Source of the DNA: Phallusia mammillata
Taxonomy: Eukaryota
DNA: 64,000 nucleotides
Reading direction: 5' to 3'
Assembly (NCBI GenBank): GCA_965637545.1
Contig: OZ281499.1
Location: forward strand, 14,198,001 to 14,262,000
Positions 54,235 to 61,499 of this stretch are shown here, one piece after another. A program made the translations under genes and the position numbers. The notes under the pieces are model-generated. The model saw only the letters and a list, made by a program, of their open reading frames with translations. It was not told the DNA's origin and made no database searches. Position 1 is the first letter of the stretch; each line of letters opens with the position of its first letter.

Positions 54235-57200
54235 CCAGCGAAGGGGACCCCGTTCCCCCTCACAGGATGCAACGGATACACCACCTGATGTGGCCCAGGA
54301 GGAGGAGGTCCACTGCGACTCCTCAACATTAATCACCGATTCCAGCGGCGAGGTAGAGGAAGAAGAGGAGACCTCGGAGGAGGAGAAGGGGGAGACCTCG
54401 GAGGACAACAGTTTTATAAAGGTCAGCAGAAAGAGGCGAGGGAGGTCTACTCCCTCCCCTAACAATAACATTAAGAAAAAGTTGCAAAAAATATCCAAGT
54501 GCCCGTGTGGGCGCTTTGTGGGAGAACCAGGTCCGGGCTTGCAGAAGGTCTGCGAGGGCTGTTCCGCAATCACTTTTGGTTGTGCTTGCGGTTCAGTTCT
54601 CGCGGTCCAACCCGGACATACAACAACTTGCCCAAAGTGCGAGAGGACTTACCATCCTCATACGCACCACGCTAGTGACCCGGGCGGTCAAACGTAATTT
54701 ATTTTATCTTTGCATCCTTTTATTTACACTGCCTAATTTTTTTTAATGGCTGACTACCTTAAAATAACAACCCTCAACTGCCGAGGACTCGCGGGTGACG
54801 CCAGGAGACTGGCCGTCTTCAAAAGTCTTCGGCAGTTGGAAGTCCATATCGTCCTCCTGCAAGAGACTCACCCTTGTTCTATTCAAATCAAAATAACAAA
54901 AGTGTGGCGAGCAATGGATTCGCAATTTTACTAATTCACCCGTCTCTCTCTTTTGTGTCGACGGGGATCGGGACGGGAGGGTTGTGGTTGCCGATATTAA
55001 AATATTTACTCAATGCGTACACGTCATAAACGCGTACGCCCCGGAAAAAGATATTAAAGCTGCAATTAGAAAATCATTTTTTGAAAATTTATATCCATTC
55101 GTAACCTCCAATCACCCAATTATACTCGCAGGCGACTTTAATGGGGTTGAACAACCCGGTTTAGACCGTTTCCCCCCCTCTAAACGTAACAATACGGCAA
55201 TGGTTCCTTTGAGGCAACTCTGCCATGACTTTCAACTTTCCGACACTTTTCGTTCCTTGACCGGAAACAAGCAAATTTTTACGCGGCGACAAGGAAATTC
55301 GCAATCTCGTTTAGACCGCTTTTATGTAAATAATACGATACAACCCATTCACGAAAAAACCCAAAATTTTTCTCTTTCGGACCACAACGCGGTGATCATC
55401 ACTGTCCAAATTGGGCCTTTGCCCAAGCGAGGATCACCGCCTTGGAAAAATAATGTCGCCGCGTACGATGAGCACTTCCAGGAGGAGCTCTCGGACAGAT
55501 GGCCTCGGTGCCTAACACTGGAGGAACATTTGTTCGAGAACGCCCCTTCCTGGTGGATGCTCATCAAACAAAAAAATAAATCATTAAACATACAAAATTC
55601 GAAACGCTTATCTAAAATACAAAAACAGGAACAAAAGGACCTGGAACGAAAAGTGACGGAATTGTGGGAAGGCATGGCAGAGAATCCTTCCCTACTCCCC
55701 CAATACCATACCTTTAAAAAAACAATTGGCCACCCTTGTTTACACTAGGGCGAAGAAGAAAACTACCAGGGACCGACTTTTACGTTTTGAGCAATCGCCA
55801 AAGGACTTTGATCGAAAGCCTTGTTGACGATTCTGGTCAAGCAAACTTCCACATTCCTTTTATTTTGGACAACACCGCTAAATTTTATGAACATCTTTTT
55901 TCGGCCAGTACTGTCAATGAGCCCATCCAAGAACGATTCTTAAATAATATACATCCCAAATTGAACGAGAGCGCATGTTTGGCACTAACCGATATAATTA
56001 GTAAAGAAGAAATTAAACGCGCTCTCCCTACGTTTAAAGCTGGGAAATCTTCCGGACCCGATGATCTCTCCTTTGAATTTTATAAACTCAATTGGGGAAC
56101 CATCGGGACAAAATTTGCTGAAATTATTAATTGCATCCATAACGGTCAAATTCCCTCAAATTTTAACGATGGGCTCATTACACTTATCCACAAAAAAACG
56201 ACAAGGACCAATTAGGTAACTACAGACCTATCTTCTTGCTCAATTCTGACCTAAAAATATATTCTAAAATCCTTTCCCTTCGCCTCAAGGCCATTTTACC
56301 GGATGTTGTTCAACCCCATCAATTTGCAAAACCCGGCAAAAAAATATCGGAAGCCACAACCCTCTTACGGGACCTCTTGTATGAGGCCCAAAGGAGAGAG
56401 CTCAATTATTACTTCATTTCGCTAGACTTTAAAAAAGCATTCGACTCCATTGCCCACACTTGGCTCTGGAAGGTCCTTTCAAAAATGGGCTTACCTCAAC
56501 AATATATTAACAATATCAAAAATTTGCACAGGGAGGGCAGCTCGAAGATTTTCGTCAACGGCTTTTCCACCAGAAGCGTTCCCATTCGAAACGGTGTTCG
56601 CCAGGGCGACCCCCTTAGCCTGTACTTGTTCGTACTGGCTATTGAACCCCTCGCCCAAGCGTTCCAGGATGACCCCAGTGTTGAGGGAATCCGCCTACCT
56701 GGAAGGCACTTGATCAAGTGCCCCAGCTATGCGGATGACGTCACACTGACCCTCACCCATTCGTTTTCTGTTAAAAAAGCTTTCCACATTCTAGACCTTT
56801 TTTATTTGGCGTCGGGCCTAAAAATTAATCCTGAAAAAACAAAAGGCATTAAGCCAAACAACGTTAATACCCTTACCCAACTCCCCGAAATCGATTGGTC
56901 TGAATCAAAATTGGATATTTTAGGAGTTTCGATCGGCCCACTAAAAACAATTCAAAACCTGTGGGAAGCAAACACCCATAAATTAAAACACGAAATTTCG
57001 CTCTCAAAGCGTTACCCCTGCACCTGGAACGCCAAGTCACTTCTATCAAAAGCCAAATTATTACCCCACCTAGCCTATACCGCAAACCTTTATCCCCTCC
57101 CTAGCGACATCGCGGAGAAGGTGAACGCCATGGTGGAAAAGTACGTGTGCGGGAGTCGGAGAGTTGCCCTCCCGATTGAAACATTAAGCAAACCTTTGGA

Positions 57201-58811
57201 CAGAGGTGGGTACAGTGTGGCAAACATCCCTCTATATTGTGACCTACTTTATCTTTCTAACATTTATCAATATTGTAAACACAGAGAAAATAATCTAATA
57301 ACCACACCCGGTCTTGCCTTGACGGAATACAACATCGGGCATCAGCTTTCCCGTCAATTTGGCTTTCGTTTGGTAAACAATACTCCCCATGCTGATGCTC
57401 CATCACCCTACTATAGCCACTCTTTAAAATTAATTGATAAATACAAATTAAATTTAGAAACCGTCCTCAATAGCAAGATTCGTAACCTATATCGTTCCCG
57501 TAATTGGTCCCCTACTGGCACCCTCCACCCGCCCCAGGGTGACCACTGGAGGAGCATTCACCACCCTATACTCTCTAATAATTTACGAACTTTAAATTAC
57601 CGTATAACATGGAATTGCCTTCCCCTATCTGCAAAGTTTTCCAATTTTCTTCTCGACAACGACACATTGTGCCCATTCTGTCAAAGTCACGCCGAAACAA
57701 TATGGCATCTCTTCATTGAATGTTCTCGAACTCAAACTGTTTGGCGCGAGGTGCACCAGCTCATCACTCGTGCCACTGGGTGCTCCTCGCTAAATTTTAC
57801 AGTTGCTCTCATTATTAATATGGAAATACCACCGCTCCTGGAGTACTGGTCCGACCTTTTGATTTCCATGATTTCCATAACAAAACAAAGTATTTGGCAA
57901 GATCGAAATAAAATAAAATATGATAACATTGATACATCACCCAATAGTATTTATTCCTGCGTTAAAAAATCAATTGTATGTCGACTTTTCTTCGAAACAA
58001 ATCGCCGTGACCCCACCTTTTTACCAGTACTCCAGGGGCTGAGGGAAGCCCTAAGGTAGTCAGCCACTCACTTTGGTCGTTATCACTTAATTTATTTTTT
58101 CCGTGTGTGTCTTTTCGTTTATTATTTACACACCTTTTCACGTTGATTTTTCGTTCATATTCCCCCAATCGGACGCTAAAAGAAAAAACAAAAACGAGTG
58201 TATACATATACATATTTATATTCTTTGTATACGTACGTACGTCCGACACAAGCATTAATCTAAGACCATACAACATTCCCCATGTTGACCGTTATGTTTA
58301 TTTTTCCACCGTTTTGTCAGTCTTTCCATTTATCAATTCACACCCGGTTTTCTTTTGTCTGTCCGAAAAAAATATATATACATATATACGGAATACCTAT
58401 ATACTTATGTGTGTATATATTGTGTATGTGTGCGTATATATACATGTCTCCTTCTTGTTGTCTATGTGTTTTGCTTTTTTTTGTTTTAGTTTTGTTAAAT
58501 ATGTATAAAATGCGCATAAGTTGCTCACTTTCGGTAAACATAGTTTCGTTGCCATAGTCACGTCAAATATTGATTTTGTTATCCAATGCGTACTTTATAT
58601 TGCAGTGTTTCCATTATTATAATTTTTCGTATGCATTAGAATCCGTAGTACTACATCAACTTGTGTTCGCAATTTTTTAAATTCGTTGTAATATACAAAT
58701 TTATGTTCGTAACTTTCCTTTGTGTGTTCGCAATGTATTATGTTGTTTTTCGTATGTGTTGTCGATTCTTCGGTTGTGTAAATTTTTGAGTTTTGTCAAT
58801 ATACAAAAATT
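54235..58811 (+). mobile_element. Family A copy A2 (5' truncated in ORF1; degenerate ORF2 54746-58059)
   Basis: High similarity to A1; ORF1 tail CPCG..CEGC..CACG..CPKC; ends TGTCAATATACAAAAATT with no poly(A). Confidence 0.9.
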
Positions 58812-58825
58812 GCGGTAAAGGATTG
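58812..58825 (+). other. 14-bp H4-like target footprint between A2 and A3
   Basis: GC GGT AAA GGA TTG versus GT GGA AAA GGA TTG flanking A1; both differences are synonymous Gly third positions. Confidence 0.7.
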
Positions 58826-60690
58826 TAGTCAGATTTTCTGCCGGAATCTGTTCGACGCAGGGTCTCCATAGACCTTGATTGGATTATTTACTTGGATTTA
58901 TCTCTGACTTTGCTCTCATTGAATTATTGCAACGTTTGAAGCTCTGCAACGCACCACAAATTGAAGAGTGGGCGTGGTCACCCTGCCTATTAAGGTCGAG
59001 GGTTAGAATTGTTTACAAAACGGAGGATGCGCCTGCGGGCTCATCTTTAAGTCTCCCGGGCGACAGGCCACGGACGACTCTGCTCCTGTGGCATCGGCGG
59101 AGGAGGGTGCCCTCCCGTCACATTCTTCTGCTATCAGTGAAAGTCAGGGCTCGCTCTCTAGAAGAGGAGCCCTCCCTGTGAAGCGAGGATGGAATAAAGT
59201 TGTGGGTGGAGGCCCACCAAGGCCCACCACTGCCCTTTTAAGAGAAACCGAAGTTCTTGTCAAATTCCCTGCAAAAAAACAGGGGATTAATCTACAAGTG
59301 GATTGAAAAAGTTAAATTTCCACTACAAGCTATTGAAGGGATCGTGGAGAGATTCAACGGCCTTACCGACATCACATGTTCATCCGAAGAGAAAGCAAAG
59401 ATACTAGCTGAAAGGCTAAACTCCTTAGAAGAGGTCGAGTATGCGAAACTCCACGATCCCGAATTCACCGACGTGGTAATAGAACATCTACCGAATAGGC
59501 TGGAATGGGAGCCAACACTGTACCAGTTGGAAAGGCGACACGGGGAGGTGCGCAAATATTATAAATTGCGGGATCCGCAATACCGAAAATTCAATGGGAA
59601 AAGAATGTTTGAAGTAAGAACAAGCGATCTTAAGGAAAATCCAATCCCGAAAAATGTCAGAGTGTGTGGATTGCGTTTCATGGTCCATTACGACAACCAG
59701 CCAATCCAATGTTTTCTATGTCGAAATTTCGGCCACAGGGACCGCGATTGTCCTCAAGAGAAAATCGACGTAGAAGATTTCCCCACTTTGTCTATAACTC
59801 CAAAGGAACACAAAGGAAAACACAGCCGTCACGCAACGGTCGTGAACGCCGAGGAGAACGCAAAAGCAGTTAGAGAAGCGTGTGAAGAGCTGAAGAGGGG
59901 GCTTGCAATTGCATCATCTTTGCAAAACACCGATACAATCAAGGATTCACTGGATACCAGTGAAGGGGACCCTGCTCCCCCCTCACGTGATTCAATAGAT
60001 GTGCCACCGGATGTGGCCCAGGAAGAGGAGATCCATTGCGACTCCTCAGCAACACCGAGCCCTGATACCAGCGCAAACGGTTCTGCGGAGGAAACTACAG
60101 ATGAGATGGGGGATACCACGGAGGACAACACCTTCATAAAGGTTAGACGGAAAAACGAGGGAGGTCCACTCCCTCTCCTGACAATAACACTAATGAAAAA
60201 ACGCAAAAAAATTTGAAGTGCGCATGCGGGCGCTTCGTCGGTGAACCCGGTCCGGGCTCGCAAAAGGTCTGCGAGGGCTGTTCCGCAATCACTTTTGGTT
60301 GTGCTTGCGGTTCAGTTCTCGCAGTCCAACCCGGACGTGCATCTACGTGCCCAACTTATAAGAGGACGTATCATCCTCACACGCGCCACGCCAGTGACCC
60401 TGGTGGTCAGACGTAACTTATTGTGTTTTGGTACCTTTTATTTATATTGTCTAAAGTTTTTTAATGGCTGACTACCTAAAAATAGCAACCCTCAACTGCC
60501 GAGGACTCGCGGATGACGAAAGGAGACTGGCCGTCTTCAGAAGTCTTCCATGTCGTCCTAAATAACAAAAGTGTGTCGAGCAATGGAGTCGCAATTTTAC
60601 TAATTCACCCGTCTCTCTCTTTTGTGTCGCATCACGGGGATCGGGACGGGAGGGTTGTGGTTGCCGATATTAAAATATTTACTCAAACCA
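58826..60690 (+). mobile_element. Family A copy A3: 5' UTR, ORF1 (to 60416) and truncated start of ORF2
   Basis: ORF 59257-60216 with CFLCRNFGHRDRDC knuckle; Cys tail as in A2; MADYLKIATLNCRGL at 60464. Confidence 0.85.
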
Positions 60691-61499
60691 GCAAGCAAAA
60701 GAAAAGCAACAGTCAGAAATAAGTTACCTGAAAAGAGGTGGTACAAGTGTTTGCAGGATTAAAAAAGGCAGCTGCAAAATTGTCTGGTGCATTCCATGGT
60801 ATAACTTGTTTCCTTTTTTTATCAATGTCCAGTAAAATATTTGTGACACACTTTACTGATTTAAAGACAAGTGGGTATATTATAGGAGTGGGGAGCAGCT
60901 GACTGCAGACCTCAAAAATGGCAACTTGGTTCCAGCTATAAGGTTTTAACACACTGCAGTGAAATGTTCTTTCAGTGGTGTAAATATATCCATATGCTTT
61001 ATATTTTAGTGCAAAATTTAGCAAGTCAGCATATATAACAGAAGTTTCAATGTCAGGTTGGAAAGTTGATGTTAAAAGACTGGATGTTCATAGTATGCAT
61101 GAATCATTGTGCACTACTTTGGTGTGTAAAATGTTAGTCCTATTATATTAATGCAGAAAATAATTCTATTCCCATTGTGTTAGGCAAATTAGAAAATCTA
61201 AATCTTTGCAATGGAGTTGCACAAACTGGTTTCAACACAAAACTGCACCCGCTTATTTTTTGGAATGGTGACAAAATTGTGGAAACCACCATTGTTTGAT
61301 CCCCCAATTATAAAATTTCAGGTATAATAAATTTGTATCATTGTGCAAAACTACGGCATTTTTGTGATTGTTTTTTGTGATATCTAACAGCAGTAACAAA
61401 TCAATGTGAACAACAAGCCAATGTAGTTGATCTTGGGGGAAGAGCTGAAGTCACATGAACAAACAGAACTTGTGAGTGTGTTTTGTATCATTAATTTGC

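What the first reader, a model, noticed from the sequence alone, without database searches (positions are those of the whole stretch)
58800..58835. A 14-bp H4 footprint separates tandem family-A copies 35 kb from any histone gene
Seen: A2 ends CAAAAATT (as A1 does), followed by GCGGTAAAGGATTG and then the 5' UTR of A3. A1 is followed by GTGGAAAAGGATTG of H4, and the two mismatches are synonymous Gly codon positions. Inference: this is a TSD from another H4 paralogue left by repeated insertion at the same site, giving independent support for H4 codon 6-10 specificity and a ~14-bp TSD. Alternatively the element carries a target-homologous 3' tip used for priming.
Basis: partly seen in the sequence, partly recalled or inferred. 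Interest (0 to 1): 0.7.

Follow-up and report, generated by a model that had tools for sequence, protein, structure and literature searches.

The report
Histone-derived spacer between tandem LINE copies
Two head-to-tail copies of a sea-squirt jumping gene that homes to the start of histone H4 and H2A genes are separated by 14 letters of histone sequence. Other copies suggest (without proving it for this pair) that the element brings these letters along at its front end, much as ribosomal-gene R1 elements do, so they need not mark a histone gene that once lay here.

Summary
A2 ends at 58811, 14 bp follow (58812-58825, 12/14 identical to the H4 letters after A1), and A3 starts at 58826.

The reading is only partly supported.
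- Family A is an L1/Tx1-like APE LINE. It nicks between codons K5 and G6 of both H4 and H2A.
- Where both flanks are readable, the target-site duplication is 20 bp (H4 copy) or 20-23 bp (off-target copy), not 14.
- None of the 48 H4 starts found by pattern search in the assembly has GGC GGT.
- A full-length copy inside an H2A gene still carries 15 H4-type letters in front of its 5' end. All five full-length 5' ends in the assembly do so.
- Off-target 3' ends carry no H4 letters.

The H4 piece therefore travels with the element's 5' end as an RNA leader. It is not a 3' tip, and it need not be a TSD made locally. A second, independent tandem pair 212 kb upstream has the same layout. A2 and A3 belong to different sublineages, so the pair reflects two events.

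The spacer's first seven letters match H2A exactly, so it may be an H2A/H4 hybrid.

The closest precedents are Drosophila R1 tandem arrays and the 28S tags on R1 transcripts. This scan had already noted the same family elsewhere in this genome (s1-545826).

The parts
1..4271 (+). A1: family-A LINE copy. Its 5' part lies before the window. It holds broken EN/RT/zf-RVT ORFs and the 3' tip at 4254-4271.
   Evidence: Pfam hits; alignment to A2; junction read.
4272..4564 (+). H4 gene remnant, 5'-truncated one base into the codon for Gly6 (mature numbering). It is the downstream flank of A1.
   Evidence: 95% identical to the intact H4 (family D9).
11666..11977 (+). Intact H4 gene of the window (GGT GGA AAA GGA TTG variant). 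It serves as the uninterrupted target reference.
54235..58811 (+). A2: 5'-truncated family-A copy, from element position about 1132 to the 3' end. ORFs are broken. The upstream flank is unrelated AT-rich DNA.
58793..58811 (+). A2 3' tip. It is a variant (2 differences) of the conserved 18-nt tip shared by all other copies, plus one extra T.
58812..58825 (+). The 14-bp histone-derived spacer. The last 9 letters are H4-type (AAAGGATTG). The first 7 are identical to H2A (GCGGTAA).
58826..60690 (+). A3: 5' part of a family-A copy (5' UTR and ORF1). The start codon is lost and there are at least 3 frameshifts. It is broken at element position about 1865 by a rearrangement shared with an inverted copy upstream of the window.

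Best explanation
What the element is. Family A is a 6,045-bp L1/Tx1-like LINE with an APE endonuclease, an RT and a zinc-binding tail, plus an ORF1 with a CCHC knuckle. It is specific for the DNA that encodes the shared SGRGKGG start of H4 and H2A.

Shown steps.
- The bottom strand is nicked between the K5 and G6 codons (AAA|GGT GG), or one base further on.
- The top strand is cut about 20 bp downstream, so a 20-bp target segment ends up in front of the element.

Inferred, with support.
- The element is transcribed from upstream, so its RNA carries that target segment as a 5' leader.
- At a new site the cDNA copy of the leader anneals to the upstream target and primes second-strand synthesis. 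H4-type letters are thereby imported even into H2A.

Inferred for this pair.
- When the site that is cut lies beside a resident copy, the result is a head-to-tail pair separated only by this 14-15-nt (A3-type) or 20-21-nt (active-type) segment. The site could be the resident's 3' junction, whose tip mimics the displaced histone codons, or its 5' duplicate.
- The A2-A3 spacer is such a segment, formed by two events in a histone gene. Later rearrangements removed the histone flanks.
- The two 'synonymous' differences are best read as an H2A/H4 hybrid or as drift of an inherited leader, not as a lost H4 paralogue.
For: Element type: Pfam Exo_endo_phos, RVT_1, zf-RVT and zf-CCHC. ORF2 matches human L1 ORF2p over EN+RT at E 4e-67. 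ORF1 (459 aa) and ORF2 (1137 aa) are intact in two copies.

Target: 3' junctions lie in H4 (twice) and in H2A (one locus, plus an identical copy on contig C38) at the same nick.

Stagger: the H4 copy has a 20-bp duplication with 420/420 and 400/400 identical flanks. The off-target copy has a 20-23-bp TSD.

Leader:
- The H2A copy's flanks are 418/418 and 400/400 identical to an intact H2A unit, yet 15 H4-type letters sit between H2A's GGTGGC and the element.
- All 5 full-length 5' ends in the assembly are preceded by H4-type letters.
- Off-target 3' ends lack them.
- Run X16 is a guessed RNA run. It does not cover the H4 promoter, which has 958x depth in a DNA run. Its contigs start 24-28 nt upstream of the element and run into it.

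Two events: A2 is 97% identical to the active copies. A3 is 94% identical to the off-target copy. A2 and A3 are only 81% alike.

Second tandem pair: at C6:14044655-14044669 the spacer is identical to present-day H4.

H2A match: 57 H2A genes were found; most of those listed read GGT GGC GGT AAG next to the nick.

Precedent: R1 tandem arrays and R1 28S tags (PMC2718515).
Against: - No RNA 5' ends were mapped. The RNA label of X16 is a guess, and contigs cannot show starts.
- The H2A copy could in principle have gained its H4-type letters by gene conversion from the 99% identical H4-resident copy.
- Only four independent full-length 5' junctions exist, so 'inherited leader' and 'fixed top-strand cut per sublineage' cannot be separated for the A3 type.
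- The histone flanks of both tandem pairs are gone, so the order of insertion and the original host gene are unknown.
- The H2A/H4 hybrid reading was made after seeing the data.
Confidence: 0.6

Rival explanations
1. The 14 bp is a target-site duplication made on the spot when one copy inserted next to the other in an H4 paralogue with GGC GGT codons. That gene has since been lost or was not assembled.
For: - R1 tandem arrays are built this way, with the TSD as spacer.
- Both mismatches are third codon positions.
- H4 variants do differ at this very codon: GGC in 47 genes, GGA in 1.
- In an H4 target the spacer would be supplied by the target DNA under either model.
Against: - None of the 48 H4 starts found has these codons.
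- The measured stagger is 20-23 bp, not 14.
- The H2A copy shows that such letters need not be local.
- Two random mismatches both fall on third positions with a chance of about 0.11, which is not compelling.
Confidence: 0.15
2. One-event model. During a single target-primed reverse transcription the RT reached the 5' end of one family-A RNA, including its histone leader. It then jumped to the 3' end of a second family-A RNA, so two different elements were joined through the leader.
For: - The pair is heterologous.
- Both tandem pairs have the layout 3' part, spacer, 5' part, and both lie outside histone genes.
- The extra T at the joint could be a non-templated letter.
- From my own knowledge, end-to-end template jumping is known for the R2 RT in vitro.
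Against: - The right end of A3 is an internal position shared with an inverted duplicate, not a 3' end from which TPRT could have started.
- Contigs in X16 extend 3-7 nt upstream of the nick-equivalent position, so at least some RNAs are longer than the spacer.
- No flanking TSD around the pair could be found.
Confidence: 0.1
3. Array-fragment model. The pair is a piece of a longer tandem array that grew by unequal crossing-over within a histone cluster and was moved here by segmental duplication. The spacer is simply old H4 sequence that has mutated.
For: - The region is heavily rearranged. It has an inverted duplicate of the A3 breakpoint and mosaic identity blocks.
- Neighbouring A2 3' UTR and A3 5' UTR are only 76-79% identical to other copies, so 2-3 changes in 15 bp are in line with the surroundings.
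Against: - Unequal crossing-over would give like copies, yet A2 and A3 are 81% alike and each is closer to other copies.
- ORF1 of A3 differs from the active copy mostly at synonymous sites. That points to lineage divergence rather than decay after insertion.
Confidence: 0.1

Closest known systems
Drosophila R1 tandem arrays in 28S rDNA (Stage & Eickbush 2009, PMC2718515)
   Same: A site-specific APE-type LINE. Head-to-tail copies are separated by a short stretch of target sequence (14 bp of 28S) that corresponds to the segment between the two nicks. The explanation given is re-insertion next to a resident copy.
   Different: - R1 arrays mostly lie in the rDNA, whereas this pair is 35 kb from a histone gene.
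- The target here is a protein-coding gene start shared by H4 and H2A.
- The element is L1/Tx1-like, not R1 clade.
- The spacer (14-15 bp) is shorter than the family's measured 20-bp stagger.
melanogaster-type R1 transcripts with 28S tags; R2 co-transcription with 28S (PMC2718515, PMC3774820)
   Same: Target-derived letters sit at the RNA 5' end, are carried to non-cognate sites, and are proposed to anneal to the target to prime second-strand synthesis.
   Different: - R1 tags come from upstream of the nick. Here the carried piece is the segment downstream of the nick, the parent's 5' duplicate.
- No ribozyme was detected (Rfam blank).
- The promoter would be a Pol II histone promoter rather than Pol I.
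Tx1-clade target-specific LINEs such as Keno (U2 snRNA) and Mutsu (5S rRNA), from my own knowledge and as cited in PMC4640811
   Same: APE-type LINEs related to L1 with strict insertion into multicopy genes.
   Different: Their targets are small RNA genes or microsatellites. I found no described histone-gene target in three literature searches. Clade membership was not tested by phylogeny.

Membership tests
L1/Tx1-like APE-type non-LTR retrotransposon | N-terminal APE-like endonuclease followed by a reverse transcriptase in ORF2 | tested here: met
   Pfam Exo_endo_phos plus RVT_1. Residues 4-880 of ORF2 align to human L1 ORF2p at E 4e-67.
L1/Tx1-like APE-type non-LTR retrotransposon | C-terminal zinc-binding motif after the RT; ORF1 with a nucleic-acid-binding zinc knuckle | tested here: met
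   zf-RVT hits at E 1.7e-07 and 6.5e-07. zf-CCHC in ORF1 is weak, E 0.0047, below the curated cut-off.
L1/Tx1-like APE-type non-LTR retrotransposon | Insertions flanked by target-site duplications, with frequent 5' truncation | tested here: met
   20-bp duplication in the H4 copy. 20-23 bp at the 5'-truncated off-target copy.
Tx1 clade specifically | Placement inside the Tx1 clade in an RT phylogeny | not tested
   No phylogeny was built. The large protein searches were not spent on this.
R1-style tandem array separated by the TSD | Head-to-tail copies with a spacer made of target sequence that starts at the nick site | tested here: met
   Window 58812-58825 and C6:14044655-14044669.
R1-style tandem array separated by the TSD | Spacer length equals the family's normal TSD | tested here: not met
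   The spacer is 14-15 bp, against 20 and 20-23 bp where both flanks can be read. It may be specific to the A3-type sublineage.
R1-style tandem array separated by the TSD | Array sits in the target gene | tested here: not met
   The outer flanks of both pairs are not histone. This could be due to later rearrangement.
Target-tagged transcript (melanogaster-type R1, R2 co-transcript) | Cognate target letters found at the 5' end of copies inserted in a different site | tested here: met
   The H2A-resident copy carries 15 H4-type letters.
Target-tagged transcript (melanogaster-type R1, R2 co-transcript) | RNA molecules that carry the tag | tested here: inconclusive
   Contigs of a guessed RNA run cross the leader/element joint. 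The RNA status and the 5' ends are not shown.

The most novel reading that the evidence does not exclude
A LINE specialised on protein-coding histone genes uses a portable, target-derived 5' leader as a homing and second-strand primer. That leader lets it hop between H4 and H2A, which share only about 24 bp, and builds head-to-tail pairs beside resident copies. Its conserved 18-nt 3' tip mimics the six displaced codons, including an in-frame ATG. The tip thereby keeps the cut site usable and leaves the interrupted histone gene with an open reading frame.
Probability: 0.35. Interest if true: 0.7.

Novelty: new variant of a known kind. Interest (0 to 1): 0.5.

Why it matters
Target-specific LINEs are models for how retrotransposons complete the poorly understood 5' joining step, and they are being developed as site-specific insertion tools. 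Here one family offers natural 'experiments' for that step: a copy in H4, a copy in H2A with an imported H4 leader, off-target copies, and heterologous tandem pairs. Together they separate what the target supplies from what the RNA supplies. The target is also a protein-coding multicopy gene, a class I did not find described for such elements. For this finding alone the lesson is more modest. A target footprint beside an element is not independent proof that a target gene once lay there.

Tried and rejected
- H4 paralogue with GGC GGT: a degenerate search of the whole assembly found 48 H4 starts and none fits.
- The exact 14-mer occurs at two other places. One is unrelated.
- The other lies next to a decayed H4 on contig C4 and looked at first like support. 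Its first six letters come from the end of a MITE and its TA duplication. The terminus was defined from at least 733 ends. Rejected as coincidence.
- 3' tail model: rejected, because off-target 3' junctions are clean.
- Known ribozyme in the 5' UTR: Rfam blank at E up to 1. The 5' UTR fold is only mildly stable, z -2.3, and the leader pairing is not conserved in A3.
- A TSD around the whole A2-A3 pair: none found. There is no further family-A 3' end within 15 kb downstream.
The 5' side of the copy on C3 and the relic noted in s1-545846 could therefore not be read.
- Literature: three searches found no histone-targeting LINE.

Full report
**1. Observation**

The window reads, from 58793: the A2 3' tip ending CAAAAATT (to 58811), then GCGGTAAAGGATTG (58812-58825), then the A3 5' end TAGTCAGATT (from 58826). 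A1 ends with the same eight letters at 4264-4271. It is followed by GTGGAAAAGGATTG and the remainder of an H4 gene truncated one base into the codon for Gly6, mature numbering.

The junction pattern occurs twice in the window and never in 100 shuffles. The intact H4 of the window (11666-11977) reads GGT GGA AAA GGA TTG. Histone motifs in the window end at about 23.5 kb, and there are none in the 10 kb after it.

**2. What family A is**

- ORFs in A1 and A2 hit Exo_endo_phos, RVT_1 and zf-RVT. The A3 ORF1 hits a CCHC knuckle weakly.
- ORF2 of an intact copy aligns to human LINE-1 ORF2p over endonuclease plus RT at E 4e-67.
- Two copies elsewhere on the same contig are full length, 6,045 bp, with intact ORF1 (459 aa) and ORF2 (1137 aa).
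- A2 is 5'-truncated at element position about 1132 against unrelated AT-rich DNA.
- A3 has a lost start codon and at least three frameshifts. It stops at element position about 1865.
- That same breakpoint, plus about 150 bp beyond it, recurs 99% identical and inverted just upstream of the window. The right end of A3 is therefore a rearrangement.

**3. Census of junctions in the assembly**

Eight 3' ends were found:

| 3' flank | Count | Detail |
|---|---|---|
| H4 | 2 | A1, and the copy ending at C6:14304916 |
| H2A | 2 | C6:14395552, and an identical copy on contig C38 |
| Tandem spacer | 2 | the window pair, and C6:14044654 |
| Off-target | 2 | C6:22813662 and C3:1082386 |

Five full-length 5' ends were found, and a pattern search shows there are no more. 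All five are preceded by H4-type letters:

- AAAGGATTG, twice, both in tandem pairs.
- AAAGGATTGGGAAAT, three times: one in H4, and two in H2A (the C6 copy and its identical copy on C38).

**4. Real duplication size**

- The H4-resident copy has flanks 420/420 and 400/400 identical to an intact H4 unit, with exactly 20 bp duplicated, plus one extra T before the element.
- The 5'-truncated off-target copy has a 20-23-bp duplication; three of those letters are ambiguous microhomology.
- The family's stagger is therefore about 20 bp, not 14.
- The off-target site resembles the histone site (GGNGGNRR after the nick).

**5. The key test: the H2A copy**

- Its upstream flank is 418/418 identical to an intact H2A unit up to GGT GGC.
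- Its downstream flank is 400/400 identical from that same GGT GGC onward.
- Between the upstream H2A letters and the element lie 15 letters that are H4 sequence and do not occur in H2A.

The H4 segment was therefore brought in with the element. Off-target 3' junctions show no H4 letters, so it is not a 3' tail. It belongs to the 5' end of the template RNA, and the RNA must start upstream of the element in the parent's H4 gene.

In run X16 (a guessed RNA run) contigs begin 24-28 nt before the element and continue into it. X16 has no cover of the H4 promoter, which a DNA run covers at 958x. This fits the leader model but is not proof.

Another agent of this scan reached a similar view of this copy (s1-545826). 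I had found and tested the copy independently beforehand.

**6. The tandem spacer**

- A second pair, at C6:14042676-14046143, has the same layout: a truncated copy, 15 bp, then a 5' part. Its spacer is identical to present-day H4. Its flanks are unrelated to those in the window.
- In the 590-bp overlap A2 is 97% identical to the active copies. A3 is 94% identical to the off-target copy. A2 and A3 are 81% alike. The downstream member of the second pair groups with A2, not A3.
- The pairs are therefore heterologous and independent. This argues for two insertions (or two RNAs) per pair, not for duplication of one copy.
- The spacer could come from the target (a local duplicate) or from the RNA leader. 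In an H4 target the two give the same letters. The spacer is thus not independent evidence that a particular H4 gene lay here.

**7. The two mismatches**

- No H4 start in the assembly has GGC GGT.
- The 14-mer next to a decayed H4 on contig C4 is a coincidence, created by a MITE terminus and its TA duplication.
- The first seven spacer letters are identical to H2A. Most of the listed H2A genes (57 found in all) read GGT GGC GGT AAG beside the nick. The register three bases further on also fits the GGNGGNRR pattern.
- An H2A/H4 hybrid of the kind seen in the H2A copy would give the spacer without any mutation. This idea was formed after seeing the data.
- Drift of an inherited leader is about equally plausible, since the neighbouring UTRs are 76-79% identical to other copies. 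A lost H4 paralogue is possible but unsupported.

**8. Comparison with known systems**

Stage and Eickbush (PMC2718515) describe:

- R1 tandem arrays whose members are separated by the 14-bp 28S duplication.
- Melanogaster-type R1 transcripts that carry 6-27 nt of 28S sequence. These tags are visible in non-28S insertions and are proposed to anneal to the target.

Family A shows both phenomena in an L1/Tx1-like element on histone genes. Three literature searches found no histone-targeting LINE.

**9. Limits**

- There was one read-laying run, on contigs only.
- No phylogeny was built.

Noticed in passing
window 4254-4271; L048:6899-7210; L049:7535-7912: The conserved 18-nt 3' tip of family A starts with ATG TCA, like the histone genes, and is exactly as long as the six codons it displaces (11/18 letters identical to H4). 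It leaves in-frame ORFs encoding H4 or H2A with MSINKN in place of MSGRGK. It also contains AATAAA. It may be a target mimic, a way to keep the host gene open, or both.
   Followed up: partly
window 60686-60836 and G000:C6:14193964-14194201 (inverted): A3 and an inverted family-A copy just upstream of the window share the same internal breakpoint and about 150 bp of non-element DNA at 99% identity. Their 5' parts are only 75% alike. This is a recent inverted duplication or a conversion patch.
   Followed up: partly
element positions 1735-1865 (window 60560-60690; L048:2685-2811): A block of about 130 bp is 99-100% identical between copies that are otherwise 76-80% alike. This points to mosaic structure through recombination or conversion among sublineages.
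   Followed up: no
L039 (G000:C4:10786636-10786932): An abundant MITE family (at least 733 termini, TA duplication, terminal inverted repeat core CAGGGGTTCCCAACC) has one copy inside a decayed H4 pseudogene. A second small inverted-repeat insert lies further into the same pseudogene.
   Followed up: partly
G000:C6:14042676-14046143 (L044/L046/L045): A second tandem pair of family A lies outside any histone gene. Its 15-bp spacer is identical to present-day H4.
   Followed up: yes
G000:C6:14196400-14196725, minus strand (L047): An H2B gene truncated in its N-terminal Lys-rich part lies just before the 5'-truncated start of A1. This is another interrupted histone gene of the cluster.
   Followed up: no
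L048:844-927 in run X16: Two short contigs of a guessed RNA run cross the H4-leader/element joint and differ at position 897. Two expressed copies or alleles may be present.
   Followed up: partly
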